A stretch of 35,102 bases of DNA from Macrostomum lignano (Eukaryota): assembly GCA_002269645.1 (NCBI GenBank), contig NIVC01004781.1, positions 1-35,102 on the forward strand, read 5' to 3'. Positions 5,049 to 34,368 of this stretch are shown one piece after another. The notes beneath the pieces are model-generated. The model did not search any database, had not been told where the DNA came from, and saw nothing but the letters and a program-made list of their open reading frames with translations. A program made the translations under genes and the position numbers. Numbering within the stretch: position 1 is the stretch's first letter; every line of letters starts with the position of its first letter.

Positions 5049-5070
5049 TCGATTTTCGGACCGAAATAAC

Positions 5071-6942: not shown

Positions 6943-6944
<2 letters not shown>

Positions 6945-8157: not shown

Positions 8158-8180
8158 ACACACACACACACACACACACC
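8158..8180. repeat. (CA)n microsatellite
   Basis: Visible dinucleotide run. Confidence 0.95.
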
Positions 8181-8499
8181 TCGAGTCTGCTTATACGTGG
8201 CAAATTAAAGGTAGAAAGCTGATTGCCTCATCTCATTCCTGTGCCAGATCGATTTGTACCCGGTAATCAGCTCAGAGGAAAAGATCTGGAATTAAAAAAA
8301 CCAAATCAAAAACCCATCAGGGCTGATGATATAACCATTCGATTGAGCAAGTTTAATATGAATGTTTTGTTATATTTTAGTCCTTCCTTGCTTAGCAGAT
8401 AAAACCATCAGCTTTTTGTGCTTGATAGAAGCTTCAGTTTTAAAAGAAAAATACCTGAGGTAGCTAAGATACGAGAGAGCTACTAGAGACTTCTGACCG

Positions 8500-12037: not shown

Positions 12038-12053
12038 CCCAATACCCACAGCG

Positions 12054-12257
12054 TCACAGTGTTAGCCTGGCATCGTCAGACACCAGCACAGCGGCAGGCC
12101 CCAGTCTCCTGTTGCATTTGTCCAGCTCGCGCAGCACCCGATCCAGCCGCCTGTCCAGAGCCGCGGAGTGCTCGAGCGTCAGGAGCGGCCCGCTCGACGG
12201 CAGGCTGGAGGCGCCAGACCGGCACAGGGCGGCCTGGGTGGCGGCGCCGAGCAGACC
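12054..12257 (-). CDS. FAM20B: FAM20B-like terminal exon 5
   Basis: Phase-0 cccAG acceptor. Reads GLLGAATQAALC...LLTLEHSAALDRRLDRVLRELDKCNRRLGPAAVLVSDDARLTL*, matching the FAM20 C-terminal pattern H..A.D.RL..V...C. Not in the ORF track. Confidence 0.9.
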   Translation of the reverse strand, partial: GLLGAATQAALCRSGASSLPSSGPLLTLEHSAALDRRLDRVLRELDKCNRRLGPAAVLVSDDARLTL

Positions 12258-12297
12258 CTGGGATTGGATGGTGGGGGAGTTAGAGTGGACACATTAG

Positions 12298-13035
12298 TAG
12301 TCTACCTGTCCATTAGACTGGATAATCTACCTGTCCATTAGACTGGATAATCTACCTGTCCGTTAGACTGGATAATCTTCCTGTCCATTAGACTGGATAA
12401 TTTACCTGTCCACTACTAGACTGGATAATCTACCTGTCCATTAGACTGGATAATCTACCTGTCCATTAGACTGGATAATCTACCTGTCCATTAGACTGGA
12501 TAATCTACCTGTCCATTAGACTGGATAATCTACCTGTCCGTTAGACTGGATAATCTTCCTGTCCATTAGACTGGATAATTTACCTGTCCACTACTAGACT
12601 GGATAATCTACGTGTCCACTACTAGACTGGATAATCTACCTGTCCATTAGACTGGATAATCTACGTGTCCACTACTAGACTGGATAATCTACGTGTCCAC
12701 TACTAGACTGGATAATCTACGTGTCCACTAGAGACTGGATAATCTACCTGTCCACTACTAGACTGGATAATCTACCTGTCCATTAGACTGGATAATCTAC
12801 CTGTCCATTAGACTGGATAATCTACCTGTCCATTAGACTGGATAATCTACCTGTCCACTACAGAATGGATAATCTACCTGTCCACTACTAGACTGGATAA
12901 TGTACCTGTCCACTACAGACTGGATAATCTACCTGTCAACTACTAGACTGCCAGACTGAATAATCTACCTGTCCACTACAGACTGGATAATCTACCTGAC
13001 CACTAGACTGGATGGATAATCCACCTGTCCATCAG
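12298..13035. repeat. 25-28-bp minisatellite CTGGATAATCTACCTGTCCA(TT/CTACT)AGA, FAM20B intron 4
   Basis: Tandem units fill nearly the whole intron. Confidence 0.97.
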
Positions 13036-13112
13036 TCAATGCAGTTCCAAATCAAGCACTCATCTCACACCCAAGCCCACGTGGATTAAATTCCTCATTT
13101 CCCAAGTCTCAC

Positions 13113-13449
13113 CTGCAGCGCCAGCAACCTGCTATTGGTGCTGGTCCGCAGCCTACAGCACTGCTGCAGAGGCGCCAGAATGCTGAGCTCATCGTGATAC
13201 GGATTCCCCAAGCCTTTGCCATTGTCCAGCGTGACAACCAGCTGCTGTCCACCAATACCGGCCGCTGTCTCAAACTCGTGCCTATCAGCGTTGCCCAATA
13301 GAAAGTCTAATATCGAGGTGTCAATCAGATCAAGCAGAACGCCAGGACCCAACCGACTTAATAGCTGTGAATTGCAGGGATTCTCGCCCAGTTGCCAAGC
13401 CGCCTTGGCATCGTTCGAGGCGTAGTTCCTGGCCCAGGGGTGCCTGTGC
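13113..13449 (-). CDS. FAM20B: FAM20B-like exon 4 (catalytic segment)
   Basis: HRHPWARNY...LLDLIDTSILDFLLGNADRHEFE...LDNGKGLGNPYHDELSILAPLQQCC keeps the DRH catalytic Asp and the DN metal-binding Asp. tttccAG and GTGAGA boundaries are phase-consistent. Confidence 0.96.
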
Positions 13450-13539
13450 CTGGAAATCACGTGTTCGGGTCGGGATTGTTTGTACTTTTTTTAGTACCGT
13501 ACTTTAAAGTTGCGACAGTTAAAGTTCGCGTCATCTCCC

Positions 13540-14470
13540 TACGGACATTTGGCGCCATCGCCCTCCACAGACATTTGGCGCCATTGCCCTCCCCCCAGAT
13601 ATTTGGCGCCATAGCCTCCCTCCAGATATTTGGCGCCATAGCCTCCCTCCAGATATTTTGCGCCATAGCCTCCCTCCAGATATTTTGCGCCATCGCCCAT
13701 CCCAAGACATTTGGCGCCATTTCCCCCTCAAGACATTTGCCGCCAACTCCCCCAAAGATTTGGCGCCATAGCCCCCTCCAGATATTTGGCGCCATCGCCC
13801 ATCCCAAGACATTTGGCGCCATTTCCCCCTCAAGACATTTGCCGCCAACTCCCCCAAAGATTTGGCGCCATAGCCCCCTCCAGATATTTGGCGCCATCGC
13901 CCATCCCAAGACATTTGGCGCCATTTCCCCCTCAAGACATTTGCCGCCAACTCCAAAGATTTGGCGCCATAGCCTCCCTCCAGATATTTGGCGCCATTTT
14001 CCCCCTCAAGACATTGCCGCCAATTCCCCCAAAGATTTGGCGCCATCGCCCATCCCAAGACATTTGGCGCCATTTCCCCTCAAGACATTTGCCGCCAACT
14101 CCCCCTAAGATTTGGCGCCATCGCCCCCTCCAGATATTTGGCGCCATCGCCCATCCCAAGACATTTGGCGCCATTTCCCCCTCAAGACATTTGCCGCCAA
14201 CTCCCCCAGATATTTGGCGCCATCGCCCCCCTCCAGATATTTGGCGCCATCGCCCATCCCAAGACATTTGGCGCCATTTCCCCTCAAGACATTTGCCGCC
14301 AACTCCCCCTAAGATTTGGCGCCATCGCCCCCCTCCAGATATTTGGCGCCATTTCCCCCTCAAGACATTTGCCGCCAACTCCCCAAAGATCGTCGATTTG
14401 GCGTCATTGCCCCACCCCAAAAGTTTGGCGCCATCACCCCCAGACCAGATTCAAGAAATTTGGCGCCACC
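13540..14470. repeat. Composite TTTGGCGCCA-core minisatellite (23-27 bp subunits, ~100 bp higher-order unit), intron 3
   Basis: Recurring subunits such as ATTTGGCGCCATCGCCCATCCCAAGAC and ATTTGCCGCCAACTCCCCCAAAG. Confidence 0.95.
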
Positions 14471-14473
14471 AAC

Positions 14474-14752
14474 CTTTTCAGAGCCAGTCGATGCGGCAGC
14501 ATCAGAACGGCGACGCCTTCAAGAACTTCGTCAGGGCCGGCGCAGACCCCGGTGCGTCGGCCAGTGCAGTAGCGACAGACGCCCCACAGACAGAGCCGGT
14601 TGTCGCTCAGGCGACGATAGAAAGTCTCTCTGAGGCGAGGCGTGGCCGCCAGCGACGCTGCGGTCAGGTTTAGCAGCCGAGGCGACGCCACGGGACCGCG
14701 GTGGAAGCCCAGAAGGCGGCCAAGGTGGTAGCCAACGACCTCGGCATTGTCT
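14474..14752 (-). CDS. FAM20B: FAM20B-like exon 3
   Basis: (R)DNAEVVGYHLGRLLGF...CLWGVCRYC...VCAGPDEVLEGVAVLMLP matches FAM20B HNAEVAAFHLDRILGF...CFYGKCYYC. Phase 2 at both ends; GTTGGT donor. Confidence 0.93.
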
Positions 14753-14779
14753 CTGCAGGGGGGCGGGCGGGCTTTGAGG

Positions 14780-15490
14780 GTGACCTGACGATCCTGAACG
14801 TAACCTGACAATCCTGAGGGCAACCTGAAGATTCTGAGGGTAAACTGAAGATCCTGAGGGCAACCTGAAGATCCTGAGGGTAAACTGAAGATCCTGAGGG
14901 CAACCTGAAGATCCTGAGGGTAAACTGAAGATCCTGAGGGTAAACTGAAGATCCTGAGGGTAACCTGACGATCCTGAAGGGTAACCTGACAATATTGAGG
15001 GTAACCTGACAATTCTGAGGGTAATCTGACAGTTCTGAGGGTAACCTGAAAATTATGGGGTAACCTGACAATATTGAGGGTAACCTGACAATTCTGAGGG
15101 TAATCTGACAGTTCTGAGGGTAACCTGACAATTCTGAGGGTAACCTGACAATTCTGAGGGTAATCTGACAGTTCTGAGGGTAACCTGACAATTCTGAGGT
15201 AACCTGACAATTCTGAGGGTAACCTGACAATTCTGAGGGTAACCTGACAATTCTGAGGGTAACCTGACAATTCTGAGGGTAACCTGACAATTCTGAGGGT
15301 AACCTGACAGTTCTGAGGGTAACCTGACAATTCTGAGGGTAACCTGACAATTCTGAGGTAACCTGACAATTCTGAGGTAACCTGACAATTCTGAGGGTAA
15401 CCTGACAATTCTGAGAGTAACCTGACAATTCTGAGGGTAACCTGACAATTCTGAGGGTAACCTGACAGTTCTGAGGGTAACCTGACGATT
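14780..15490. repeat. 20-bp minisatellite GAGGGTAACCTGACAATTCT, intron 2
   Basis: About 35 tandem units. Confidence 0.97.
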
Positions 15491-15679
15491 TTAATGGAAT
15501 CTGAGTGTCATATGTGAGTCTAAGAAGTCAGCAGGGTGTCTAGACCTCAAAAACAACTAAGAATCCAAAGACTTTTAGGACACAAACATTGCTTAGAATT
15601 CAATAAGGTGTCAGATCTCAACCCAAGCTCAAGACAATGATGATGCCAGCTCTAGAAAAAGCACCCCTTTATCACGCAC

Positions 15680-15930
15680 CTGTCCCTGCCGGCCACAACG
15701 CTCCCAGTCATCACCCGATCGCGGTCGTAGACGCGTGGCTTAAAAACCACAGATGCGCCACCGGTTCCAGCATCCAGTTGGAGTAGCAGCTTCATCTGAC
15801 TGCCAGCTGGAAACTCTGAGACCAACGAGACGGCAGCTTGGCCTGTCAGCCGTTCCAGCTGAGATAGAATTCGCTGACTGGCGTTGCTAGGCAACAAGCG
15901 ACGCTCTTTGTTGTTAGCGGCGAACGAACT
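15680..15930 (-). CDS. FAM20B: FAM20B-like exon 2
   Basis: Phase-0 ttttcccAG acceptor. AGSQMKLLLQLD...VVFKPRVYDRDRVMTGSVVAGRDR matches GTQLK...VVFKPKRYSRDHVVEG..YAGYDR, the FAM20B-specific pattern. Confidence 0.93.
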
Positions 15931-15979
15931 CTGGGAAAATTGGGGTGTTCCAGTTTATGGGTGAGACTACTGTAGCTTA

Positions 15980-17110
15980 ATTAAGTGGCGCCAAGGAGAG
16001 TCTTCTAGTGGCGCCAATTTGAGTCTTCTAGTGGCGCCAAGTTGAGTCCTCTAGTGGCGCCAAGGTGAGTCCTATAGTGGCGCTAAGTTGGGTCTTATAG
16101 TGACGCCAAAGTTTCTTAAAGTGGCGTCAAGTTGAGTCTTATAGTGGCGCCAAAGTTTCTTATAGTGGCGCCAAGTTGAGTCATCTAATGGCGCCAAAGT
16201 TTCTTAAAGTGGCGCTAAGTTGAGTATTCTAGTGGCGCCAAGGTGAGTCCTATAGTGGCGATAAGGTAGGTCTTACAGTGGCGCCAAGTTGTGTCTTATA
16301 TTGGCGCCAAAGTTTCTTTAAGTGGCGCTAAGGTGAGCCTTATAGTGACGCCAAGTTGAGTCTTCTAGTCGCGCTAAGGTGGGTCTTATAGTGGCGCCAA
16401 GTTGTGTCTTATAGTGGCGCCAAAGTTTCTTAAAGTGGCGCCAATGTGAGTCTTATAGTGGCGCCAAGGTGGGTCTTATAGTGGCGCCAAGTTGAGTCAT
16501 CTAGTGGCGCCAAAGTTTCCTAAAGTGGCGCTAAGTTGAGTCTTCTAGTGGCGCCAAGGTGAGTCCTATAGTGGCGCTAAGGTAGGTCTTACAGTGGCGC
16601 CAAGTTGTGTCTTATAGTGACGCCAAAGTTTCCTAAAGTGGCGCCAAGTTGAGTCATCAAATGGCGCCAAAGTTTCTTAAAGTGGCGCTAAGTTGAGTAT
16701 TCTAGTGGCGCCAAGGTGAGTCCTATAGTGGCGATAAGGTAGGTCTTACAGTGGCGCCAAGTTGTGTCTTATATTGGCGCCAAAGTTTCTTTAAGTGGCG
16801 CTAAGGTGAGCCTTATAGTGACGCCAAGTTGAGTCTTCTAGTGGCGCCAAGGTGGGTCTTATAGTGGCGCCAAAGTTTCTTAGTGGCGCCAAGGTGAGTC
16901 TTATAGTGGCGCCAAGGTGGGTCTTATAGTGGCGCCAAAGTTTCTTAAAGTGGCGCTAAGTTGAGTCTTCTAGTGGCGCCAAGGTGAGTCCTATAGTGGC
17001 GCTAAGGTAGGTCTTACAGTGGCGCCAAGTTGTGTCTTATAGTGGCGCCAAAGTTTCTTTAAGTGGCGCCAAGGTGGGTCTTCAAGTGGCACTAAAGTGT
17101 CTTATAGTGG
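15980..17110. repeat. ~23-bp minisatellite TAGTGGCGCCAAG(T/G)TGAGTCTT(C/A) with ~473 bp higher-order duplication, intron 1
   Basis: Variant block starting GCGATAAGG at 16258 recurs at 16731. Confidence 0.95.
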
Positions 17111-17224
17111 CGTCCAGGTGAGACTTACGGAGGGTTGAATTATGATAGGAACCATTTCTTTGAAAAATCCTTGAAGGCCGACCAATTAGGCGTCCTAATT
17201 TAGTCGTCATTGCAGTCAATATAG

Positions 17225-17600
17225 ATAGGCGCTCTGATGTGCCAGCGGCCCAGGCTCGATTCCAATTTGCAGTCACATTAATTTGGGTCTAAATTGGAAT
17301 CTCGGCTTGGCTCTGCTCGTGCAATTAACGACTAGTTTGAGGGCCAACCCCCAAGACACAGTGAAGTGTACATGCCTAACGATAAATAAAGTTAAAGCCT
17401 CTGTACACTTCTGTGTGAGTGTGTGCCTGTGCGTATGACTGCGTACGTATCTGCGCGCTTGTGTGCCTGCTCAGGGGAGTCGGCGGAATGGGCAGTAATG
17501 CCTCTCGCTGGTTGTGTGACAATGTCGCTTATTAAAGTGCACCAGGGTGCGCTCATACACACGCTCATACAGCATGTACAGCAGCCCAAACTTTCTAATC
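17225..17600 (+). mobile_element. tRNA-derived SINE-like repeat, copy 2 (inverted relative to copies 1 and 3)
   Basis: GGCGCTCTGATGTGCCAGCGGCCCAGGCTCGATTCC head, with a body collinear with the reverse complement of copy 1. Confidence 0.78.
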
Positions 17601-17646
17601 GTCAGGCAAGAGTCAGACTCATTTACCATGCAAAGTGAGACCTCAC

Positions 17647-18099
17647 CATAGCAACATAGCTATCGTGCAGTCCAGCCTCCAGAGCAAATCCTTTATTAAA
17701 GTTACTACTATTAGTAGTAGTAGCGTAGAGCTCCGCAGGCGGCCAGCCGGCATCCAGCAGATCCCGGATGCGCAGCTCCTGGTCGCTGTTAGCCGGCCGG
17801 AAATCCGGCAGCCCCTCGTGGCCCCGGTGCTCATACAACCGATTGGACTGCAGTCGCCAAGCAATATGAGCAGACTGGCCTAGACTATGCGATTCGCGAT
17901 CGTGCTTAGCAACTAAACTGGCGTCGTTAGCAACCGAGGCGGGCAGTTGACTCAAGTTGAGCACAGTCAGACAGGCGAAGACCAATAGCGCGGCCAATGC
18001 GTAAGCCAATAAGCGGCGATTGAAGCCGGAGATGCGGCGTCTCGGAGGCTGGAGATGTCGAAGATGACAGATAACTGTTTGAGGAAACCGAGCTCCAAG
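17647..18099 (-). CDS. FAM20B: FAM20B-like exon 1: basic tail, signal anchor and stem; no in-frame ATG upstream of the anchor
   Basis: Open frame from phase-0 acceptors at 18099 (ttttacAG) or 18048 (catctccAG): PPRRRISGFNRRLLAYALAALLVFACLTVLNL... Phase-0 GTGAGG donor at 17646 fits exon 2. Confidence 0.8.
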
Positions 18100-18216
18100 C
18101 TGTAAAATCTAAGAGCTACTTTAACCTAGAAAAGTAAACTAGAGTAGTTTTTTACGAGCGTAATTAATTTATCAGGTGGCTACAATGGACACAATGGATG
18201 GTAAGACTTAACCACC

Positions 18217-19038
18217 AATTTGGTGCCTCAGACAGGATTGAAGCGTCAATTTGGCGCCTCAGACAGGATTGAAGCGTCAATTTGGTGCATCAGACAGAAT
18301 TTAAGCGTCAATTTGGCGCCTCAGACAGGATTGAAGCGTCAATTTGGCGCCTCAGACAGGATTGAAGCGTCAATTTGGTGCATCAGACAGAATTTAAGCG
18401 TCAATTTGGCGCCTCAGACAGGATTGAAGCGTCAATTTGGCGCCTCAGACAGGATTAAAGCGTCAATTTGGTGCATCAGACAGAATTTAAGCGTCAATTT
18501 GGCGCCTCAGACAGGATTGAAGCGTCAATTTGGCGCCTCAGACAGGATTGAAGCGTCAATTTGGTGCATCAGACAGAATTTAAGCGTCAATTTGGCGCCT
18601 CAGACAGGATTGAAGCGTCAATTTGGCGCCTCAGACAGGATTGAAGCGTCAATTTGGTGCATCAGACAGAATTTAAGCGTCAATTTGGCGCCTCAGACAG
18701 GATTTAAGCGCCTATGTGGCGCCTCAGACAGGATTGAAGCGCCTATTTGGTGCCTCAGACAGGACTTTAGGCGCCGATTTGGCGCCTCAGACAGGATTTA
18801 AGCGCCTATTTGGTGCCTGAGACAGAATTTAAGCGCCTATTTGGTGCCTGAGACAGGATTTAAGCGCTAATTTGGCGCCTCAGACAGGACTTTAAGCGCC
18901 AATTTGGCGCCTCAGACAGGATTTAAGCGCCTATTTGGTGCCTGAGACAGAATTGAAGCGCCTATTTGGTGCCTGAGACAGAATTGAAGCGCCTATTTGG
19001 TGCCTGAGACAGGATTTAAGCGCCTATTTGGCGCCTCA
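18217..19038. repeat. 31-bp minisatellite TTTGGCGCCTCAGACAGGATTGAAGCGTCAA with 93-bp trimeric higher-order unit
   Basis: Every third unit is the variant GGTGCATCAGACAGAATTTAAG over 18220-18700. Confidence 0.97.
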
Positions 19039-19784
19039 TGTGAGATTTTAAGTGCCAAATCATTTTTCTCTGAGAACATGATCTTTCATTTTTAATAAAC
19101 AGCTACGAGGGGGCCAGAAGACCTTATTGACCTCCTCTGGATAGCTCCCTTTTGCCATTACAAAGAATGGCACAAAGATTTCGAGATAGGAAAAAAGCTT
19201 GACTTAGTCATTTGAAGGTCAACTACTTGCTTAAAGTTTGACATAACTAACCGATGCCAATTTAGCTTAACTTGCAGGTGCTAAGGGGGCGGCTAATACG
19301 CTTCTGACCCACTAAACAATAACCATTCTTTAGTGTTACATAGTTCAGAGCTAAGTATAAACAATTCAATTTTAGAAGTTATTAAAACTACCAACAAATT
19401 GGCGGCTAGTGGGCTGGTGATGATAACAGAAAAACAAACAAGGAAATCTTTCGACAAGCACTCGACATTCCCAATGTCATCGCCCACGGTTGCTAACCCG
19501 GTTGTGCTTGGATATTATCGGAATAGAAATCTAAACAAATCACTTGATTATAGAAACTGCCACTTTGCCTAATAACATTTGACACTCCAACCTGCACCTT
19601 CCCTATATTCTAGACCTAGACAGAGAGTGAATGGGAGGGGTGTAGGATTCAGGGTATATCTGATGGTTAATCAGACATTGCATCTGTCATCATAGCCTAT
19701 AGCCTACATCAAGACATCCGGGAAGTTCTTGCGCTTACGAATTATAATTCAGACATAGGCCTATCTGTAATATCTGCTTATGTT

Positions 19785-20085
19785 CAAGCGACATTGTCAC
19801 ACAACCGGCGAGAGGCATTCCTCCCCACTCTGCCGACTCCCCTGAGCAGGCACACAAGCGCGCGGATACGTACGCAGTCATAGGCACAGGCACACACTCA
19901 CACAGGAGTGTACAGCGGTCCTAACTTTAATTATCGTTAGGCATGTACACTTCACTGCGCCTTGGGGGTTGGCCCTCAAGACTGTTAATTGCACGAGAAG
20001 AGCCAAGCCGAGATTCCAATTCAGCCCCAGATTAATGTGACTGCACTTGGAATCGAGCCTGGGATGCTGGCACATCAGAGACTAC
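19785..20085 (-). mobile_element. tRNA-derived SINE-like repeat, copy 3 (truncated)
   Basis: ACAACCGGCGAGAGGCATT...GGAATCGAGCCTGGG is nearly identical to 10033-10300. Confidence 0.8.
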
Positions 20086-20504
20086 GCCCCCATCGACATG
20101 TCTACCCTAACCTAGACACACACTATTGATACAAACAACCCAGCTGAAATTTCATGCTCTGAATGTTCAACTAGAAATCAGATACTTACAATAAATACAT
20201 CTAAATAAGGAGCTGTTGCGAAGCCTAAAAATGACTAATAATTAAAATTGTAAAACAAAGACAAGAAAAAAGTCAGACTGCTATGCAATAATTAGTTTTT
20301 TTGTTTCCAAAATTTTGCTTAACACACGAGCCAGAGCCATTGAGTTGTTGGTTTTCTTTTATTTGGAGTTGTTGGAGAACAACGAACCAGAAAAAAAGGA
20401 TTTATGGAATTGTTATTTAGAATGGGCTCCTTCAGACTTATTGCACAAGGTCAGATCACGTAGCTCTTGTCCTCCATAGTTAGCTGATCCGGTTAGCCCA
20501 GCCT

Positions 20505-21056
20505 TCAGAACACCATAGCATGCGGCCGCTGCCCAGACTTGATGCTGAACAAAGATCGCAGATAAGAGCGCAGCATCGGGCCATCACCGCTGGCCTTGAT
20601 CGCGCCCATCAGCGCCTTGTCAACGGCTGCCTGATCTTCCCGACGCTCAGCCGACACAGCGTAGGCGGCGTCCGACTTTGCGAAGATGTCGGCGCTGCCG
20701 CCAGCCGAGGCGGCCGACTTCTTAGCCGAACGCTGGCGACGGAAATAGGCGTCGTTAAGTCGCTCGGGCAGAGCGACCTTGCTGATGTCGATGCGAGTTT
20801 TAGTGCCGATTACGTAGCGTTGACTGACGCGGCGGAGAGGGCAGCCGTTAAGCTTGCGGGGTCCCGTGACCAGCAGCAGGCCGCTCTCGAGCTGCTTGAG
20901 CAGCACAACGCGCTTGCCCTTGTGCCGGCCAGCTAGCAGGATTAGGACGGCGCCAGGCGCCAGGTTGGAGCGAATACGGCGCACGTGTTTCTTGAAGGTC
21001 TTCTTCGGGCGTAGCTGAACCTTGCGGCTGGCCACCTGAGTGGGCAGCGACTTCGG
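20505..21056 (-). CDS. RPL6: 60S ribosomal protein L6 (eL6), last exon
   Basis: PGAVLILLAGRHKGKRVVLLKQLESGLLLVTGP..LNGCPLRRVSQRYVIGTKTRIDIS is the L6e KOW-domain signature. Phase-0 tttgcAG acceptor. Confidence 0.98.
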   Translation of the reverse strand, partial: PKSLPTQVASRKVQLRPKKTFKKHVRRIRSNLAPGAVLILLAGRHKGKRVVLLKQLESGLLLVTGPRKLNGCPLRRVSQRYVIGTKTRIDISKVALPERLNDAYFRRQRSAKKSAASAGGSADIFAKSDAAYAVSAERREDQAAVDKALMGAIKASGDGPMLRSYLRSLFSIKSGQRPHAMVF

Positions 21057-21069
21057 CTGCAAATCAGTG

Positions 21070-21755
21070 GGGACGACAGGATTAGTGTTTGGGGTGAGAG
21101 GATTAGTGTTTGGGGTGAGAGGATTAGTGTTTGGGGTGAGAGGATTAGTCTTTGGGGTGAGAGGATTAGTGTTTGGGGTAACAGGATTAGTGCTTGGGTT
21201 AGAGGATTACTGTTTGGGGTGAGAGGATTAGTCTTTGGTGTAACAGGATTAGTGTTTAAATGACAGGATTAGTTTTTGGGGTGAGAGGATTAGTGTTTGG
21301 GGTGAGAGGATTAGTGTTTGGGGTGGCAGGATTAGTCTTTGGGGTAACAGGATTAGTGTTTAAATGACAGGATTAGTTTTTGGGGTGAGAGGATTAGTGT
21401 TTGAGGTGAGAGGATTACTGTTTGGGGTGAGAGGATTAGTCTTTGGTGTAACAGGATTAGTGTTTAAATGACAGGATTAGTTTTTGGGGTGAGAGGATTA
21501 GTGTTTGGGGTGAGAGGATTAGTCTTTGGTGTAACAGGATTAGTGTTTAAATGACAGGATTAGTTTTTGGGGTGAGAGGATTAGTGTTTGAGGTGAGAGG
21601 ATTACTGTTTGGGGTGAGAGGATTAGTCTTTGGGGTAACAGGATTAGTGTTTAAATGACAGGATTAGTTTTTGGGGTGAGAGGATTAGAGTCTGGGGCGA
21701 GAGGATTAGTGTTTGGGGTGAGAGGATTAGAGTCTGGGGTGACAGAATTAGTCTT
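21070..21755. repeat. 21-bp minisatellite TTTGGGGTGAGAGGATTAGTG filling the RPL6 intron
   Basis: About 30 tandem units. Confidence 0.96.
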
Positions 21756-21861
21756 TAAGGGGACAAGCAGGGTGCCTGGCTTACGAGTAGAGGGCTTAGG
21801 GTTGCTAAAAACTCTCATACTTCCCACTGCAGCCTGCAGTTCACACATACAAAGCACTCAC

Positions 21862-22089
21862 CGTCTTCTTGTACACCTTCCTCTCTCCGCCATTCTTATC
21901 GCCGCCAATTTTCTTAACAACAAAAGCGGCGGCGGCGGCTTTCTCGGCCGATTTCTTGGCCGGAGTCTTAACCTTCTTAACCTTGTACGCGGCCTTGCGT
22001 TGGAAAATTCTGGCCCGAGAATATTTCATCAGCCTACTGGCGTTAATAGCCGAGTTCTTGGGCTTGTGGGGAGCGCTGCTCTTGGCCAT
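21862..22089 (-). CDS. RPL6: RPL6 first coding exon
   Basis: tgcAG|CAA ATG GCC. MAKSSAPHKPKNS...KYSRARIFQRKAAYK...VVKKIGGDKNGGERKV is the L6e N-terminus. Phase-0 GTGAGT donor at 21861. Confidence 0.96.
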
Positions 22090-23039
22090 TTGCTGCAATG
22101 TAGCATGGGTTAAACAGGTTTAGAAAATTCATTTTCGAATGAGTTACAGAGAGAAACTAAGATTTATAGCCAAATATATAAGCGGAGGAAAATTAAAAAA
22201 AGGATATAAACCTTAATCGGGCAGTTTCAAAGGACCGAGGGCCGGTTACGGTTAGAGAGGCTTATGCCCGCGGGCCGACCCCTGCTCTAGGTGACAAAAT
22301 ATCACGGCACAAGTCGCCGAAAAGTCGTCGAAGACTCAATTCAAGATGGTTTACTGTTTGCGACTCTTGGGGCTGTAGAGCCACTGAGTTGCATCTAAAG
22401 CGCAATTGCGTCACTTTATAAATCAGAATCGCATTCTGTGTTTATAAAACAACGATATTTTGTCTACTCAAGTTCTCGTATTACGAGTAGAAAGTTAAGC
22501 GCTAAAACATCGACTCTTGGGACGACTTCTTTTTGCGACTCTTTAAGATTCTACAGCTCGCGTGATGCGCTTTGTGACTTTGAGTTTACAGTAAACACCA
22601 GCAAGTTTAAGGACAGCTGTTATCCATTAATAAATAAACATTTGCTTAGACAAACAGTTTTTTCGTGCAAGGAAGAGAATGAATAGTTAATAGGTGTGTA
22701 AGCGTAAGGGAATTTATATTAGGTTAGCAATCCAAATAGCCAAGGAAGAACAACGTGAACTATAAAATGGATTGTGCAAGGAAGATGAGGAAAATAATTT
22801 TATCTAGATCAAATTCACGTACTTTGCCTTGCGGCTTTTTCTGCGCTTTAGGAGCCATTGGCGTATTTTACTAAACTGTATGTCTCAAACTTTACTCAAT
22901 ATAATATTATTAGGGAAAATTATTGCAAGCTACTGCAAGTAGCAAGATGAGGGCACTAGCAGAAATACAAAAAATGCACCGGGTTTTTATCAATCATTTG
23001 AAAGCCAGCATAAAATGCTGATTAAACTGATTAAATTGA

Positions 23040-23520
23040 CACTCTGGGAGGCTGGCCGAGCAACTGAGGACCTGGAAGGCTGCCCCAGCCACTAAGGATC
23101 TGTGAGGCTGGCCGAGCAACTGAGGATCTGGGAGGCTGCCCCAGCCACTGAGGATCTGGGAGGCTGGCCGAGCAACTGAGGATCTGGGAGGCTGCCCCAG
23201 CCACTGAGGATCTGTGAGGCTGGCCGAGCAACTGAGGACCTGGAAGGCTGGCCCAGCAACTGAGGATCTGGGAGGCTGGCCCAGCAACTGAGGATCTGGG
23301 AGGCTGGCTCAGCAACTGAGTATCTGGGAGGCTGGCCCAGCAACTGAGGATCTGGGAGGCTGCCCCAGCAACTGAGGATCTGGGAGGCTGGCCCAGCAAC
23401 TGTGGATCTGGGAGGCTGGACCAGCAACTGTGGATCTGGGAGGCTGGCCCAGCAACTGGGGATTTGGGAGACTGGCCCAGCAAATGAGGATCTGGGAGGC
23501 TGGACCAGCAACTGAGGATT
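23040..23520. repeat. 28-bp minisatellite GGAGGCTGGCCCAGCAACTGAGGATCTG, 3' of MRPL45
   Basis: About 17 tandem units. Confidence 0.96.
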
Positions 23521-23787
23521 TGAGAGTTATTTACAATAAACTTACGATAAAAAATGAAATTATAAATAAAAACGAATACGGAAAAACATTTTATTAACAA
23601 ATATTAATAGCAAGGCAAATTTCGGTTTACTTTCTGAAAATTTAAGCTACGCCAATAACATTACTTCAATACTAATTGAAATCATATTCGATATAGATAC
23701 TAAAAGCATTAAATTGAAATAGAATTTTCAGATTTAAGTCGAATATTTTAAACAAACAAAAAACAACTGCACCAAATCGATTGCATA

Positions 23788-24132
23788 TCAAGCAGCCTGA
23801 TCGTAGTAGCGAAATGTGGGCAACAGGGGCAGCCGGTTATCCTTAGACTGGTAGCGCCCGTGCAGCAGCCACTGGTGAAACTCGGCAGTTGCGTTACATT
23901 CGTACACGGGGAATTCCACCAGCTCGCGCGGAGTCTCCCACGAGCCGAGGATCAGCCGGCCGAACCTGTCAAATATTGCCCGGCGCTGTCTGAGGTGAAC
24001 GCGCACAGTGGCTTGAACAAATTGCAGATCTCGACCGATTTCTTGTTTAGCAAATTTCATTATCTTCGGCTCGCTGACTACTGACAGTAGTTCGAAGCGG
24101 TACGACCGGTTTAGAATGTCGTCCGTCATGCA
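23788..24132 (-). CDS. MRPL45: MRPL45 (mL45, Tim44-like) last exon
   Basis: VQATVRVHLRQRRAIFDRFGRLILGSWETPRELVEFPVYE matches [25 protein letters not shown]...PKDVLEYVVFE. Phase-0 ttttccAG acceptor; AATAAA at 23595-23590. Confidence 0.93.
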   Translation of the reverse strand, partial: CMTDDILNRSYRFELLSVVSEPKIMKFAKQEIGRDLQFVQATVRVHLRQRRAIFDRFGRLILGSWETPRELVEFPVYECNATAEFHQWLLHGRYQSKDNRLPLLPTFRYYDQAA

Positions 24133-24169
24133 CTGGAAAAATTGATAGGAGAAAATGGTGGGAAGCTGG

Positions 24170-24660
24170 GATCAACTGAGGATCTGGGAGGCTGAGTGGC
24201 AAAGCAACTGAGGATTTGGGAGGCTGGTCCTGCCCAGCAACTGAGAATCTGTGAGGCTGGCCCAGAAACTGAGGATCTGTGAGGTTGACCCAGAAACTGA
24301 GGATCTGAGGCTGGCCCAGCAACTGAGGATATGTGAGGCTGGTGGCCTAGCAACTGAGGATATGGGAGGCTGGTGGCCTAGCAACTGAGGATATGGGAGG
24401 CTGGTGGCCCAGCAACTGAGGATATGGGAGGCTGGCCCAGCAACTGAGGATCTGTGAGGCTGGTGGCCTAGCAACTGAGGATATGGGAGGCTGGCCCAGC
24501 AACTGAGGATCTGGGAGGCTGGCCCAGCAACTGAGGATCTGGGAGGCTGGCCCAGCAACTGAGGATCTGGGAAGCTGGTGTCCCAGCAACTGAGGATCTG
24601 GGAGGCTGGCCCAGCAACTGTGGATCTGGGAGGCTGGCCCGGCAAATAAGGATTTGGGAG
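24170..24660. repeat. Same 28-bp minisatellite family (plus 31-bp GGCTGGTGG variants) in MRPL45 intron 2
   Basis: Unit shared with 23040-23520, same orientation. Confidence 0.95.
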
Positions 24661-24718
24661 GTTTAGCAAAGCTCTTAAGCAAAAATTAACAAGAAAGCAT
24701 TCAATTATCGATTTATAC

Positions 24719-24776
24719 CTTGAATCCTCGCGGTGTCAAATGATTTTCAAGTAGATTTTCGGCATTCTTATTAAGA
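24719..24776 (-). CDS. MRPL45: MRPL45 58-nt internal exon (not in ORF track)
   Basis: atttcAG and GTATAA boundaries; phase 2 in, phase 0 out, exactly bridging the neighbouring exons. Reads (D)LNKNAENLLENHLTPRGFK. Confidence 0.82.
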
Positions 24777-24872
24777 CTGAAATGTGTTGAGATTGATATC
24801 AGTTCAAGATGAATAACACAGAAGTTTTAGCAAAAAAAGGAAACAATACGGCAGCAGAGCCGATATACTCAC

Positions 24873-25375
24873 TCCTGCAGCTGCTCATTAACAGACACAT
24901 AGTCATCCTGCAACAGGCGGGCCAGCTCCTCCTTGCCACCGCTAGGAATCAGATCATTATTCTTCAATAGATTCTCCGCCTCTCTATGCGAACTTTTCGG
25001 CTTCTTCTGGTCCCAGAGTCTGGCGGTTTTATTCACCAGACTGCGCAGGCCGCTGCCCTCTACAGCGTCAGCTTCTTCCATTGGTTCGAAGATCCGATCG
25101 GATGACCGATGGAACAGGCTGCCGTGCAGGAATGGCAGAGTCTGTATCTGACTGTGCGACTGCATCAGTTTAATTCGATCTGGCATACTGCGCTGCCGGC
25201 CGAATTCATCTTCAAACCAAACGCTGGGCCGATTGCGCAGCTCCGGCCCGAATTCGTGCACTCTTAATTGGCGAATTATTTTAAAGCGCGGATGCCACGG
25301 CTTGTGGCGAGCGTAGCGGACTGGCTGGAAGCCTAGCAGGATTCGGCCGCAGCCAATACAGGAGGAGGCTGAGGC
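24873..25375 (-). CDS. MRPL45: MRPL45 first coding exon; begins at a phase-0 acceptor with no ATG
   Basis: ctaac branch site and aacttgcAG|GCC TCA GCC. Reads ASASSCIGCGRILLGFQPVRYARHKPWHPRFK...; GTGAGT donor at 24872. Confidence 0.88.
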
Positions 25376-27840
25376 CTGCAAGTTAAACGAACAGGTAGTT
25401 AGGTCAGGTATCAAAAAGGGTATTTATTACAATAGGTGTATATTTAGAGATTTCATTTAGTTGCTATCTTGGCAATTTTACATCTCAAGGTTTTTAATTC
25501 ATTGAATTCCAATAATTCAGAACAAAAACTTAATTGTAACAAACCTAGATTGACTAGAGGCCAATTAAACTAAAAACTATTGGACTACAGTCTTGAAATT
25601 GCATTTGAAAAAAGTAATAGGTTTTTACCTCAGAATTATATGTTGCACTAACTTTATTTTGTAAAGTATTTTATAAGCCAAGTTATTAATGCATATACTT
25701 TCAATGCTTTTGTTTTCAATAAATGTATGCAATTTATTGTATAAATATACTATTACATTAGACTTTCTGGCACTAAAATGCAAAATTGCATCTAAGGTCT
25801 AATTTCAAGATGCGATTTGAAGTCACATTGTTATATAACTCCCCTATTCATGAATGCATAACACCCAGCTAAGCTAGCCAATCTGACTTAGCCAAGGTAA
25901 ATTGCAAAAATGCCCACCCAAAAATTACTACTATTAAACAAAACAATGAAAATTTTTGTTTAAATTATTTAAATCATTGTTATAAATTATTTAAATCATT
26001 GTTTAAATTATTAAACAATGAAATGTGGAAGCAGATGGATATTACCAATTTTTGTCCAATTTTTATATTGGATAAAGCTGCTCACCAAATATTGGGTACA
26101 TTGTCTAATTAAATAAAGGTCAATATCAGCAGTAAGTATTAGATATTTATTTGATTTGCCTATGCATTTTGTCACATCTTAGATATCTTCAAGGTCAAAA
26201 TTTATTTGAACCAAACAAAATGTATCAGCAACTCAAATAATTAACTAATACTTAATGTTGATATTGACCTTTATTTATCTACTCTTCATTAAGCGAGCCA
26301 CTTTACCTGATTTCTACATTGTCTAATTATTTTAGTTTTTTTGTCCAAATCTCAATCAATTTCTTGTCCATTTCCAATCTAGATAAGAAATGATAAGAAA
26401 AATGTATAATCTTTCATCTAGTCTATCTAAATTGCAGTAAAAAATTGAATGCAAGGCATTTGAAACAAACAAAAAATGGCTTGCAAGGTAAAATGCACAA
26501 ATTTAAGCTATACAAATGCTTTCCCTTTTATTTGCTCTTGTTTGAGGAAGATGTGCTATAGCAGCTTTGGCAAATGTAAGATGACATTAAAATCAGCAGT
26601 TATCTTAGCACTTATCTATTCTATTGAGGGTTTATTGTGATCTAGATTATAATAGAAGGCAACATTAGATGTCAAAATCAATAGACAAATGAGATAGAAG
26701 TGCATGATATTCCTATTTACTTTCTTACATCTGCAAATGTTTCAAATATTACTAAGCTTAAAAGTGAGAATGAGTTGTAACATATGTTGTACAACCTACT
26801 TTACTCAAGATGATCAGCATATAGACTTATATCCTAGTAAACTATAGTCTCCTAGAGGCCATTCCATGGAAAATTCCAGCATGCAAGAGCCTTTGGTATC
26901 CAGTGTATGGCATGTATTGCATATAAGACAAGAAGACTAAGCAAATTTAGACTAAACAAAGTGTAAATACATAATTTTTTTGCAATGATTTAACAAATTT
27001 TAAAGAAGTGGCAAACCTATTTTTGCAAAATTTTGAAGCTTAACATTTTATTTTTTTATAAATATAATACAAAGATATAAGTATGAATTTAAGTCAGTAA
27101 ATTAAAAGTTCATATTCTAATAGACTTTTTGTTTTGATTGATGTTTCATAAAATCATCACTCAGTTTCAAAATATACTCTTTCTTGCTGTTTAGAGGTTA
27201 ACCCATAGCCTGGATCATGCTGGGTGCTCACCCAAAGAAAAATTGAATATAGAAAAATGCATGCCAAAAATGTAGTATATGCCTATTCTAAAAAATATAC
27301 TGGTCATGCATTTTTGCAGCTTACCTTGGCTGGGCCCTTGCCAGCCAGCTGGATCGACTTGGTGTTACATCTGGATGATCAATATAAGGACAAAACAAGC
27401 TTAATTATGGTGTAAGGATTAAAATTCTATATGTGGCATATTTTTATTTTGAGAATAAAAGAAAAACTATAATTAGTTATATTTTTTAAAGGACTAATGC
27501 AAAATAATCTACAAGAAAAATGCTAAAAATGACATATAAAGAATGAAAATCCATTGAATAGTTCAAAAGTTATGTTAATTATAACTTGGAAAATCAGACC
27601 TTTTGAGCAAAAAATGATCACATTGCTTTATGGGAAAATTGCATTATGAAAGTATAAAAAAATATGACACTAAAAGTACTTTTTTATTACTTGACCAAAA
27701 TTCAAAAGTGAGGTGTCTTTTTACTCATACAAATAAGATCTATTATACTACATAGTTAAAAATAAGAAATTTAGAAGTTTATAAAAATCTCACTGGACCT
27801 CCTACTACCATGTGACTCTGGTCTCTGGGTCATTTGCAAA

Positions 27841-33346: not shown

Positions 33347-33423
33347 CTGGAACAGGAATTCCGGAGCGGTTTGCGAATCCAATTTTGTTATATTATTAGT
33401 TTATTAGCTGATTAGCTACTTAC

Positions 33424-33803
33424 CTGCAGGGGACTGTATCTGTGCGTGACCATCAATGATGCTTAGCGTTTTAGCCTCACCACATCGGCAACTGCCCTCA
33501 AGATGAAACACCAGCTGCATATTTTTGTCTTCATCTTCCTCTTGTAAGCCAACGATGACTGTCCAGTCAATGTCGGAGTCGGCAGCGGTCAGTCCATTCA
33601 CCTGCTTCAGACTGTTGCCCCATCCGTCTGCGTAGCTGCCAGTCATGCTCCTGCCGTCTTTGGTGATGATGCCAGCCAGGGTCTCCAAAAAGTCAGCCAA
33701 TCTCTGCTGCTGCTTGGCCCGCTCGCGAGTGAAGCCTGCGCTGCTGAGAATTCTGCTCAGACTTTCACCGCGCGTCAGGTTTCCGGGACTCTGTAGGATT
33801 TCG
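33424..33803 (-). CDS. cGLR-type gene exon with nucleotidyltransferase catalytic motifs
   Basis: tctacAG phase 2 in, GTAAGT phase 1 out. MTGSYADG...ADSDIDWTVIV is the GS-x-D-x-D pol-beta-superfamily motif. Confidence 0.88.
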
Positions 33804-34368
33804 CTGTAGATAGCCAGCAGTTTAAGGAAGAATTTTATGAGAGGTATTCAATACAAGCATGCTCAGAGAACGGACTCATCAATGAGCTCAATGTAAATTA
33901 ATCCCATGAGCCTAATCATAAAATATCATTAATAGTCATCGAATAGGAAAGACGTCGAAGAGCACTTCATCAAGACTAAGGCAAGTCAAAGACAATGATA
34001 AGCCTCACTCACTAAAATCCACAGGAAAAGAACAAAGTTTCACTCAAAGTCCCATGAAGTTCATCAAGACTATGTTGCTTTGATACTTTGGTGCTGTGAG
34101 AGAAAAGTAAGACGCTACTTTGGATTAAAGACAGAAAAGTTGAGTACAGTGGTTTAGAAGTTTTAGCAAAATATTTTTAATGAACCGTTTGATCTCTTGG
34201 GGTTGTAAATTTTGCCAAATTGAATCTGGCAGTAAAGTGCCTATTATTGCCTATTGCCTATTCAGGTCTAAAGAAATAAAAGTGACTTCACAGAAAAAGA
34301 GGGACTCATTGAAAAATATGGACTCCTCCACCCTTAATATCAAGAAATCGTCAAATCGAAATACTTAC

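What the first reader, a model, noticed from the sequence alone, without database searches (positions are those of the whole stretch)
12054..25375. Operon-like tandem cluster MRPL45 - RPL6 - FAM20B
Seen: all genes lie on one strand, and each first coding exon starts at a phase-0 3' splice site (RPL6: AG|CAA ATG). AATAAA signals follow MRPL45 (23595) and RPL6 (20363), with ~1.5 kb and ~2.3 kb from these signals to the next acceptor. Inference: a polycistronic unit resolved by trans-splicing, coupling a mitoribosomal protein, a cytosolic ribosomal protein and a proteoglycan kinase. The cGLR gene 6.3 kb upstream is also co-oriented.
Basis: inference. Interest (0 to 1): 0.7.

Follow-up and report, generated by a model that had tools for sequence, protein, structure and literature searches.

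The report
Flatworm trans-spliced three-gene cluster, probable operon
The window is a contig of the flatworm Macrostomum lignano, where spliced-leader trans-splicing and operons are already documented; this MRPL45–RPL6–FAM20B cluster is an ordinary, plausible example in which two genes take their start codon from the spliced leader.

Summary
The window is the whole contig NIVC01004781.1 of the Macrostomum lignano assembly Mlig_3_7. Published work reports that about 30% of genes in this species are SL trans-spliced and about 15% lie in operons.

Gene identities, the shared minus strand, both AATAAA positions and the stated distances are confirmed.

Two corrections:
- The RPL6 site "AG|CAA ATG" is the acceptor of exon 2. 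The annotated CDS starts 766 nt upstream, in a small ATG exon (22858-22823).
- The "phase-0 acceptor" pattern has a specific, known cause. MRPL45 and FAM20B have no genomic ATG. Their ORFs begin exactly at consensus trans-splice acceptors, in frame with the 3'-terminal AUG of the SL.

Polycistrony is plausible but not shown:
- MRPL45→RPL6: the spacer is about 170 nt once a 484-bp minisatellite is removed, and the two genes share a transcriptional-unit name prefix in the public annotation.
- RPL6→FAM20B: about 1.15 kb of non-repeat spacer remains, just over the published 1-kb cutoff, and FAM20B has a different prefix. Older chimeric RPL6–FAM20B models join the two genes at the FAM20B acceptor.

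No RNA data were available to me. Verdict: interpretation partly supported; a new member of a known kind; low interest.

The parts
23788..25375 (-). mL45/MRPL45 gene, with coding exons 25375-24873, 24776-24719 and 24132-23788. It encodes 301 aa and has no genomic start codon.
   Evidence: My model is. It is 100% identical to GenBank PAA46601.1, which is labelled 'partial'. It matches mL45 chains in the PDB at E=6e-13, with query residues 169-281 aligned to mL45 residues 152-265.
25376..25382 (-). Putative SL trans-splice acceptor of MRPL45: CTTGCAG|GCC. The exon starts at 25375, in phase 0, so the SL AUG would give M-ASASSCIGCGR...
   Evidence: The sequence is. It matches the published trans-splice motif [T/C]TNCAG. 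An in-frame TGA lies 10 codons upstream with no ATG between. Models PAA69320.1 (P0244) and UniProt P0002/P0245 begin exactly at this base.
23590..23595 (-). AATAAA 193 nt after the MRPL45 stop codon.
   Evidence: It reads AACAAA in paralogous loci L002 and L003.
23043..23526 (-). 28-bp minisatellite (17 copies) that fills most of the MRPL45–RPL6 spacer. The same family occurs in MRPL45 intron 2 (24173-24661).
   Evidence: The array is about 0.85-0.9 kb longer in L002 and L003.
22933..22939 (-). Candidate 3' splice site CTTGCAG|TAGC upstream of RPL6 exon 1. The exon would start at 22932, giving a 74-nt 5'UTR. This is a possible SL acceptor for RPL6.
   Evidence: It matches the motif and is preceded by a pyrimidine-rich tract. 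Its use is not shown.
20505..22858 (-). eL6/RPL6 gene, with coding exons 22858-22823 (own ATG), 22092-21862 and 21056-20505. It encodes 272 aa.
   Evidence: My model is. It matches the GenBank CDS coordinates and the sequence of P0246. Pfam hits are L6e_N plus L6e.
22093..22099 (-). It is also in frame with an SL AUG, so it may serve both cis- and trans-splicing.
   Evidence: UniProt ML2-assembly models P0250-P0252 start 'LQQMAKS', which translates TTG CAG|CAA ATG.
20358..20363 (-). AATAAA 142 nt after the RPL6 stop codon.
   Evidence: It is conserved in all three loci.
19786..20080 (-). Interspersed repeat of about 295 bp (SINE-like) inside the RPL6–FAM20B spacer.
   Evidence: Further copies lie at 17232-17530 and 10014-10314.
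18216..19038 (-). 31-bp minisatellite (26.5 copies) in the RPL6–FAM20B spacer.
   Evidence: L002 has about 6 copies and L003 has none.
18049..18054 (-). Putative SL trans-splice acceptor of FAM20B: CTCCAG|CCT. The exon starts at 18048, in phase 0, so the SL AUG would give M-PPRRRISGFNRR followed by a transmembrane helix. A second in-frame candidate is TTTACAG|CTT (exon start 18099).
   Evidence: UniProt P0123 begins exactly at 18048, and the chimeric models splice into this site. The in-frame stop at 18111-18109, with no ATG after it, is read.
12054..18048 (-). FAM20B-like kinase gene, with coding exons 18048-17647, 15930-15680, 14752-14474, 13449-13113 and 12257-12054. It encodes 490 aa and has no genomic start codon.
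   Evidence: My model is 100% identical to P0123 over its full length. GenBank PAA46599.1 is labelled 'partial'.
31719..34739 (-). Upstream co-oriented gene encoding an ankyrin-repeat plus Mab21-like protein (792 aa). It starts at its own ATG. No evidence places it in the unit.
   Evidence: Mab-21_C scores 23.5 bits, just below Pfam's cutoff of 24.1.

Best explanation
This is a cluster of three same-strand genes in Macrostomum lignano whose mRNAs mature by spliced-leader (SL) trans-splicing.

MRPL45 and FAM20B have no start codon in the genome. The 35-nt SL, which ends in ...UUGCAUG, is joined to acceptors at 25375 and 18048 (or 18099). Its terminal AUG then becomes the initiator Met, in frame with each ORF. 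This restores an arginine-rich, acid-free presequence on mL45 and a short basic tail plus signal-anchor helix on FAM20B.

RPL6 has its own ATG in a small upstream exon. Both its exon-1 upstream site and its exon-2 acceptor are also usable SL sites.

The most likely transcription arrangement is a polycistronic unit starting upstream of MRPL45. Cleavage/polyadenylation after each cistron and SL addition at the next acceptor would release the mRNAs. The intercistronic spacers are inflated by minisatellites.

What is shown: gene models, the absence of ATGs, acceptor phase and motif, and repeat content.
What is inferred: actual SL use, and co-transcription. Co-transcription is fairly likely for MRPL45–RPL6 and less so for RPL6–FAM20B.
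For: Organism and contig:
- Searches identify GCA_002269645.1, NIVC01004781.1.

Published background for this species:
- The SL is CGGTCTCTTACTGCGAAGACTCAATTTATTGCATG and the trans-splice motif is [T/C]TNCAG.
- About 30% of genes are SL-spliced and about 15% lie in operons.
- The operon criterion is a repeat-adjusted spacer below 1 kb, with a mode near 100 bp (PMC8629364).
- About 7% of assembled transcripts are multi-gene precursor RNAs (PMC5730564).

SL-donated AUG:
- It is established in flatworms (Cheng et al. 2006, cited in PMC9851317 and PMC12582326).
- It has been noted for Macrostomum (PMC10468722).

ATG-less ORFs:
- All five GenBank MRPL45 and FAM20B entries at the paralogous loci are labelled 'partial'.
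- Independent models start exactly at the acceptors.
- Both acceptors fit the motif and are in phase 0.
- mL45 collinearity shows that essentially only the Met is missing.
- Only one in-phase ATG...GTRAG mini-exon candidate exists upstream of each gene. One is 2.4 kb away and the other lies inside a repeat.

Co-transcription:
- The MRPL45 AATAAA to candidate RPL6 acceptor distance is about 655 nt, of which 484 is minisatellite, leaving about 170 nt.
- MRPL45 and RPL6 carry the same transcriptional-unit prefix at two loci: Mlig023218.g1/.g3 and Mlig004575.g1/.g2 (naming rule).
- The ML2 chimeric proteins P0250 and P0252 join RPL6 ...HAM to PPRRR... exactly at the FAM20B acceptor.
- No opposite-strand or intervening annotated genes are present, and gene order is identical at three loci.
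Against: - I could examine no SL-containing reads, poly(A) reads, 5'-end data or long reads, so no junction is directly observed.
- RPL6→FAM20B keeps about 1.15 kb after removing the tandem array and the one interspersed repeat I could recognise. L003 has no array and still has 1583 nt from stop to acceptor. That is just over the published 1-kb criterion.
- FAM20B has a different TU prefix (Mlig004525).
- The shared prefix for MRPL45 and RPL6 could come from multi-mapping reads on the 28-mer array, which also sits in an MRPL45 intron.
- The chimeric models use a weak donor (ATG|GTGTTC) and may be annotation artefacts.
- GenBank CDS starts lie 9-15 nt downstream of the acceptors in some copies, so their 5' ends are imprecise.
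- In locus L002 the FAM20B acceptor reads CTG instead of CAG.
- RPL6 has its own ATG exon, and TATA-like sequences lie upstream of both exon 1 and exon 2, so an internal promoter is possible.
Confidence: 0.6

Rival explanations
1. The three genes are separate transcription units that are merely adjacent. MRPL45 and FAM20B are monocistronic, SL-trans-spliced genes, each with its own promoter and outron, and still use the SL AUG. RPL6 is transcribed from its own compact promoter, either in the about 185 nt between the minisatellite and exon 1 or inside intron 1.
For: - In M. lignano most SL-spliced genes are not in operons; only about 40% are.
- The RPL6→FAM20B non-repeat spacer is about 1.15 kb, and FAM20B has its own TU prefix.
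- Regions up to 2 kb upstream suffice as promoters in this species.
- RPL6 has its own ATG exon.
- TATA-like motifs lie upstream of exon 1 and about 70 nt upstream of the exon-2 acceptor.
Against: - MRPL45 and RPL6 share a TU prefix at two loci.
- The repeat-adjusted MRPL45→RPL6 spacer is about 170 nt, close to the operon mode.
- Chimeric RPL6–FAM20B models exist.
Confidence: 0.32
2. There is no trans-splicing at these sites. MRPL45 and FAM20B have unannotated upstream cis exons that supply the ATG, and the 'partial' labels reflect incomplete transcript assembly.
For: One in-phase ATG...GTGAG mini-exon candidate exists 2.4 kb upstream of MRPL45 (27811-27794). Another lies upstream of FAM20B (20075-19902).
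Against: - The FAM20B candidate lies inside an interspersed repeat.
- Two independent annotations at three loci found no upstream exon.
- Both proteins are full length apart from the Met.
- The acceptors fit the SL motif and phase.
Confidence: 0.05
3. This contig is a redundant or degenerating duplicate, and its gene copies are not the expressed ones. M. lignano DV1 carries a duplicated chromosome and a hidden polyploidy. The features seen here would then say little about function.
For: - Three near-identical loci exist.
- The published deduplication removed 46% of scaffolds.
- Locus L002 has a mutated FAM20B acceptor.
Against: - All ORFs in the window are intact and identical or nearly identical to the paralogous copies.
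- The splice sites in the window are canonical.
Confidence: 0.03

Closest known systems
Macrostomum lignano SL trans-spliced operons (Wudarski et al. 2017, PMC5730564; Ustyantsev & Berezikov 2021, PMC8629364)
   Same: - Same species and the same assembly.
- Co-oriented adjacent genes.
- Acceptors fit the [T/C]TNCAG motif.
- Spacers are inflated by repeats, as those authors describe.
- Three genes is a normal operon size; 18% of their operons have three genes.
   Different: - The RPL6→FAM20B spacer is slightly above their 1-kb repeat-adjusted cutoff as far as I can measure it.
- I could not check whether this cluster is in their operon list. The gene IDs were not found in the supplements held for PMC5816591 and PMC5730564, and no supplements are held for PMC8629364.
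Flatworm SL 3'-terminal AUG used as initiator methionine (Cheng, Cohen, Ndegwa & Davis 2006, J Biol Chem 281:733; cited in PMC9851317)
   Same: - The SL ends in AUG.
- The acceptor is in frame with an ORF that has no start codon of its own.
- In Schistosoma mansoni more than 40 cDNAs need the SL AUG.
   Different: That work was experimental and done in S. mansoni. Here the dependence is inferred from sequence and annotation, in a free-living macrostomid.
Chimeric gene models over flatworm operons, and acceptor sites shared between cis- and trans-splicing (Calvelo et al. 2025, PMC12582326)
   Same: - The ML2 models fuse RPL6 and FAM20B at the downstream gene's acceptor.
- The RPL6 exon-2 acceptor could serve both cis- and trans-splicing.
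   Different: That study covers parasitic flatworms and defines its chimeras with SL reads. Here no reads were available.
Caenorhabditis elegans operons (SL2-type)
   Same: A polycistronic pre-mRNA is resolved by 3'-end formation coupled to SL addition. Such operons are rich in housekeeping, ribosomal and mitochondrial genes (my general knowledge).
   Different: - M. lignano has a single SL and no SL2 specialisation.
- The spacers here are hundreds to thousands of nt, against about 100 nt in C. elegans.
- The C. elegans SL does not donate an AUG.

Membership tests
M. lignano SL-resolved operon (criteria of PMC8629364) | Adjacent genes lie on the same strand and are not interrupted by an opposite-strand gene. 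| tested here: met
   The GenBank gene calls on the contig and on two paralogous loci show only MRPL45, RPL6 and FAM20B, in this order and on one strand.
M. lignano SL-resolved operon (criteria of PMC8629364) | The downstream gene is SL trans-spliced, shown by SL-containing reads at its 5' acceptor. | not testable with these tools
   No RNA reads were available. Indirect evidence is strong for FAM20B: an ATG-less ORF starts at a motif-matching, in-phase acceptor, and independent models start there. For RPL6 it is ambiguous: there are candidate sites at 22932 and 22092, but the gene also has its own ATG exon.
M. lignano SL-resolved operon (criteria of PMC8629364) | The repeat-adjusted intergenic distance is below 1 kb (MRPL45→RPL6). 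| tested here: met
   AATAAA at 23590 to the candidate acceptor at 22932 is about 655 nt. Subtracting the 484-bp array leaves about 170 nt. Even measured to the ATG at 22858 it is about 250 nt.
M. lignano SL-resolved operon (criteria of PMC8629364) | The repeat-adjusted intergenic distance is below 1 kb (RPL6→FAM20B). | tested here: inconclusive
   About 2.3 kb raw, minus the 823-bp array and the roughly 295-bp interspersed repeat, leaves about 1.15 kb. L003 has no array and measures 1583 nt from stop to acceptor. I had no genome-wide repeat library, so more of it may be repeat.
M. lignano SL-resolved operon (criteria of PMC8629364) | A single promoter drives a polycistronic precursor RNA. | not testable with these tools
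   Only indirect evidence exists: a shared transcriptional-unit prefix for MRPL45 and RPL6 at two loci (naming rule), and chimeric RPL6–FAM20B models.
SL-donated initiator AUG (flatworm type) | The species' SL ends in AUG. | tested here: met
   The published SL sequence ends ...TTGCATG. PMC10468722 notes the final ATG as a translation start. There is no SL gene in the window itself.
SL-donated initiator AUG (flatworm type) | The acceptor is in phase 0 with the ORF, and no genomic in-frame ATG lies between the upstream stop and the conserved protein body. | tested here: met
   MRPL45: an in-frame TGA lies 10 codons upstream of 25375, and the first in-frame ATG is at about residue 64. FAM20B: an in-frame TAG lies at 18111-18109, and the first in-frame ATG comes after the transmembrane helix, at about residue 133.
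SL-donated initiator AUG (flatworm type) | The SL–exon junction is observed in mRNA, and the protein starts at the SL Met. | not testable with these tools
   This needs RNA-seq junction reads, ribosome profiling or N-terminal proteomics.
mL45 (MRPL45) | Sequence homology to mitoribosomal mL45 that is collinear over the Tim44-like C-terminal domain. | tested here: met
   PDB mL45 chains match at E=6e-13, with query residues 169-281 aligned to residues 152-265 of 306. Pfam gives only a sub-threshold MBA1 hit.
eL6 (RPL6) | Ribosomal_L6e_N and Ribosomal_L6e domains are present. | tested here: met
   L6e scores 2.5e-35. L6e_N scores 23.2 bits, slightly under its cutoff of 25. Identity to animal RPL6 proteins is about 50%.
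FAM20B (glycosaminoglycan xylosylkinase) | A Fam20C-type kinase domain is present, and the protein is closest to the FAM20B subfamily rather than FAM20A or FAM20C. | tested here: inconclusive
   The Fam20C domain scores 2.4e-50. The top named hit is xylosylkinase-like from Lineus (39% identity), but many FAM20C-named proteins follow closely. No phylogeny was made.

The most novel reading that the evidence does not exclude
All three genes really are one polycistron whose intercistronic spacers reach 0.7-2.3 kb. Those spacers are made largely of hypervariable minisatellites, with 0 to 26 copies between paralogous loci, and two of the three cistrons depend entirely on the SL for their start codon. 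That would make the locus a natural test case for how far poly(A) and trans-splice sites can be separated, and how much repeat expansion an operon tolerates.
Probability: 0.35. Interest if true: 0.3.

Novelty: new member of a known kind. Interest (0 to 1): 0.17.

Why it matters
Mostly as a correct, instructive annotation. The locus shows why M. lignano proteins are deposited as 'partial': the start codon comes from the spliced leader. It shows how chimeric models arise across neighbouring genes. It also shows why raw intergenic distance underestimates operon membership in this repeat-rich genome.

It adds no new principle. SL trans-splicing, operons and SL-donated AUGs are all described for flatworms, and this contig is already publicly annotated.

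Tried and rejected
- Rfam gathering-threshold scan of the window found no RNA family.
- ARAGORN found no tRNA, so the SINE-like repeat is not called as a tRNA.
- The SL 35-mer with up to 3 mismatches gave no hit in the window, so there is no SL RNA gene here.
- The RPL6 homologue search did not return the window's own protein. The 90% clustering puts RPL6 in the FAM20B cluster, probably through the chimeric models.
- None of these clusters has a member from RNA-seq (Logan) assemblies, so I could not read an SL on a transcript contig.
- The gene IDs Mlig023218, Mlig004575, Mlig004525 and Mlig012452 were not found in the searchable literature or in the supplements held for two papers. No supplements are held for PMC8629364.
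- A scan for upstream in-phase ATG mini-exons gave one weak candidate per gene. I rejected them as unsupported.
- Conservation between the three loci cannot serve as a test of function. They are recent duplicates, 93-99% identical even in spacers.
- The bacterial promoter/terminator scanner was not used, because it does not apply to this organism.

Full report
**Origin of the window.** A conceptual MRPL45 protein built from three minus-strand exons is 100% identical to GenBank PAA46601.1, 'hypothetical protein BOX15_Mlig023218g1, partial [Macrostomum lignano]'. That protein sits on a contig of exactly 35,102 bp. The contig is NIVC01004781.1 of assembly GCA_002269645.1, Mlig_3_7. The window is therefore a whole scaffold of a free-living flatworm. 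This matters because SL trans-splicing and operons are documented in this species:
- The single 35-nt spliced leader is CGGTCTCTTACTGCGAAGACTCAATTTATTGCATG.
- About 30% of genes are SL-spliced and about 15% lie in operons.
- The trans-splice acceptor motif is [T/C]TNCAG.
- Operon spacers are inflated by repeats. After repeat subtraction they peak near 100 bp, and the published cutoff is 1 kb (PMC8629364).
- About 7% of assembled transcripts are multi-gene precursors, which the authors cut into genes using SL and poly(A) read peaks (PMC5730564).

**Checking the observation.**
- mL45: matches PDB mL45 chains at E=6e-13, collinear, with query 169-281 aligned to 152-265 of 306 residues.
- eL6: Pfam Ribosomal_L6e at 2.5e-35.
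- FAM20 kinase: Pfam Fam20C at 2.4e-50. The best named hit is xylosylkinase-like.
- All three lie on the minus strand, with no other annotated gene between them or within 10 kb downstream.
- AATAAA is at 23595-23590 and 20363-20358. Each is the first minus-strand AATAAA after the stop codon, at 193 and 142 nt.
- The Ank+Mab21-like gene ends 6.3 kb upstream.

One element is wrong. The RPL6 site 'AG|CAA ATG' (22092) is not the start of the first coding exon. A 36-nt exon at 22858-22823 (ATG GCT CCT AAA ... GGC AAA|GTACGT) splices in frame to it. This gives MAPKAQKKPQGK-QMAKSS... and a 272-aa protein. The GenBank CDS on this contig and on two paralogous loci has exactly these limits and this sequence.

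**What the 'phase-0 acceptor' pattern is.** MRPL45 and FAM20B have no start codon in the genome.
- MRPL45: the ORF opens at CTTGCAG|GCC TCA GCC (exon start 25375). An in-frame TGA lies ten codons upstream with no ATG between. The first in-frame ATG is about 64 codons in.
- FAM20B: the ORF is closed by TAG at 18111-18109 and has no in-frame ATG until after the transmembrane helix. Two acceptors are in frame: CTCCAG|CCT (exon start 18048) and TTTACAG|CTT (exon start 18099).
- All these acceptors fit [T/C]TNCAG.

Joining the SL's terminal AUG at 25375 gives M-ASASSCIGCGRILLGFQPVRYARHKPWHPRFK.... This stretch is basic, with no acidic residue for about 40 positions, as expected of a mitochondrial presequence. 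Joining it at 18048 gives M-PPRRRISGFNRR-LLAYALAALLVFACLTVLNL, a short basic tail plus signal anchor. The Lineus FAM20B-like protein has the same layout.

Independent annotations agree:
- All five GenBank entries for these two genes at the paralogous loci are flagged 'partial'.
- PAA69320.1 and UniProt A0A1I8G4R5/A0A1I8J845 begin at the first base after the MRPL45 acceptor.
- UniProt A0A1I8HKK1 is identical to my 490-aa FAM20B model and begins exactly at 18048.

Use of the flatworm SL's 3'-terminal AUG as initiator Met is established (Cheng et al. 2006, as cited in PMC9851317 and PMC12582326). It has been noted for Macrostomum (PMC10468722). A scan for alternative in-phase ATG...GTRAG mini-exons found one candidate per gene. 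One is 2.4 kb away and the other lies inside an interspersed repeat. I therefore consider SL trans-splicing with a donated AUG very likely for MRPL45 and FAM20B, although no SL junction read was seen.

**Is it one polycistron?**

MRPL45→RPL6:
- Of the 929 nt from stop to the RPL6 ATG, 484 are a 28-bp minisatellite. This array is about 0.85-0.9 kb longer at the two paralogous loci.
- A good 3' splice site, CCCTCATCTTGCTACTTGCAG|TAGC (exon start 22932), lies 74 nt before the ATG.
- The repeat-adjusted gap from the AATAAA to this site is about 170 nt, inside the published operon range.
- MRPL45 and RPL6 carry the same transcriptional-unit prefix at two loci: Mlig023218.g1/.g3 here and Mlig004575.g1/.g2 on NIVC01001332.1.
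- Prefixes were given to clusters of assembled transcriptional units, which were then cut into genes. Two unrelated genes sharing a prefix implies an assembled unit spanning both. This is my inference from the naming rule.
- A caveat applies. The same 28-mer array sits in MRPL45 intron 2, and multi-mapping reads were allowed, so a spurious bridge is possible.

RPL6→FAM20B:
- The distance is 2.3 kb raw. Subtracting the 823-bp 31-mer array and a roughly 295-bp interspersed repeat leaves about 1.15 kb.
- Locus L003 lacks the array altogether and still has 1583 nt from stop to acceptor. That is just above the 1-kb cutoff.
- FAM20B has another prefix (Mlig004525).
- On the other side, two ML2-assembly UniProt models (771 and 745 aa) fuse RPL6 to FAM20B as ...SGQRPHAM|PPRRRISG.... 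They run from a weak donor ATG|GTGTTC at the RPL6 stop into exactly the 18048 acceptor.
- In parasitic flatworms such chimeras are treated as signs of polycistronic precursors, including across spacers of several kb (PMC12582326). Here they could equally be annotation artefacts.

RPL6 itself may have two 5' forms. The ML2 models start 'LQQMAKS' (TTG CAG|CAA ATG), and an SL AUG at the exon-2 acceptor would also be in frame. Shared cis/trans acceptors are common in flatworms.

**Other qualifications.**
- The MRPL45 AATAAA reads AACAAA in both paralogues.
- Locus L002 has CTG instead of CAG at the FAM20B acceptor, though the upstream in-frame acceptor at the position of 18099 is intact there.
- The three loci are recent duplicates. 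This fits the duplicated chromosome of the DV1 line and the redundancy of this assembly. Their shared gene order is therefore not evolutionary evidence.
- The Ank+Mab21-like gene starts at its own ATG, lies 6.3 kb upstream, and has no link to the cluster.

**Verdict.** The clearest result is that two of the genes depend on the SL for their start codon.

My estimates:
| Claim | Probability |
|---|---|
| SL use with a donated AUG at MRPL45 and FAM20B | about 0.8 |
| MRPL45–RPL6 co-transcription | about 0.6 |
| One three-gene polycistron | about 0.35-0.4 |

It is a further instance of a known kind of system on an already annotated public contig, so interest is low.

Noticed in passing
Not in the window: P0009 (GenBank PAA72884.1, Mlig004334g1) and Logan transcript proteins P0003, P0004, P0006, P0008: M. 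lignano has a second, old RPL6 paralogue that carries an N-terminal EF-hand pair fused to a complete eL6 (419 aa). It is only 54% identical to the window's RPL6. Both are about 45-52% identical to other animals' RPL6. The same EF-hand–eL6 architecture appears as continuous ORFs on transcript contigs of unidentified origin.
   Followed up: partly
window 13537-14377, 15984-17127, 18216-19038; also 23043-23526 and 24173-24661: Three different minisatellites, in FAM20B introns and in the RPL6–FAM20B spacer, share a TTGGCGCC core. A 28-mer family occurs both in MRPL45 intron 2 and in the MRPL45–RPL6 spacer. Copy number differs greatly between paralogous loci: the spacer array has 26 copies here, about 6 in L002 and 0 in L003.
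   Followed up: partly
window 19786-20080 (-), 17232-17530, 10014-10314: An interspersed repeat of about 300 bp, about 90% identical between copies, contains a B-box-like GGCTCGATTCC. It is possibly a tRNA-derived SINE. ARAGORN and Rfam call nothing there.
   Followed up: partly
window 27841-28436: A MITE-like element of about 600 bp has 131-nt terminal inverted repeats that are 97% complementary. It is present here and in L003 but absent from L002.
   Followed up: partly
L002 about 18172-18180 (equivalent to window 18049-18054): The paralogous copy on NIVC01001332.1 reads CTCCTG instead of CTCCAG at the FAM20B acceptor. Yet the ML2 chimeric model P0250 carries L002-type substitutions and still splices there. 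The difference may be a polymorphism or an assembly error.
   Followed up: no
window 15930-15939 / GenBank PAA46599.1: The GenBank FAM20B model has three extra residues (AM-FSQ-SSF) at the exon 1/2 junction compared with the UniProt model and mine. The implied acceptor is not preceded by AG.
   Followed up: no
window 31719-34739 (-): The 'cGLR' is annotated as a 792-aa protein with N-terminal ankyrin repeats. Mab-21_C scores 23.5 bits, just under the cutoff of 24.1. A GS...DSDID nucleotidyltransferase-like motif is visible in the ORF at 33416-33700. L003 carries a longer paralogue of at least 1083 aa.
   Followed up: partly
window 11271-12037 and 11216-11221 (-): The first AATAAA after the FAM20B stop codon lies about 830 nt downstream, beyond a 767-bp 23-mer array. 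The 3'UTR probably contains a minisatellite.
   Followed up: no
window 1-3000 and 7001-8000: GC and AT skew are very strong here: GC skew is -0.5 to -0.7 in the first region and +0.64 in the second. This suggests further strand-biased tandem arrays. No genes are annotated downstream of FAM20B within the 10 kb covered (window 2054-12053).
   Followed up: no
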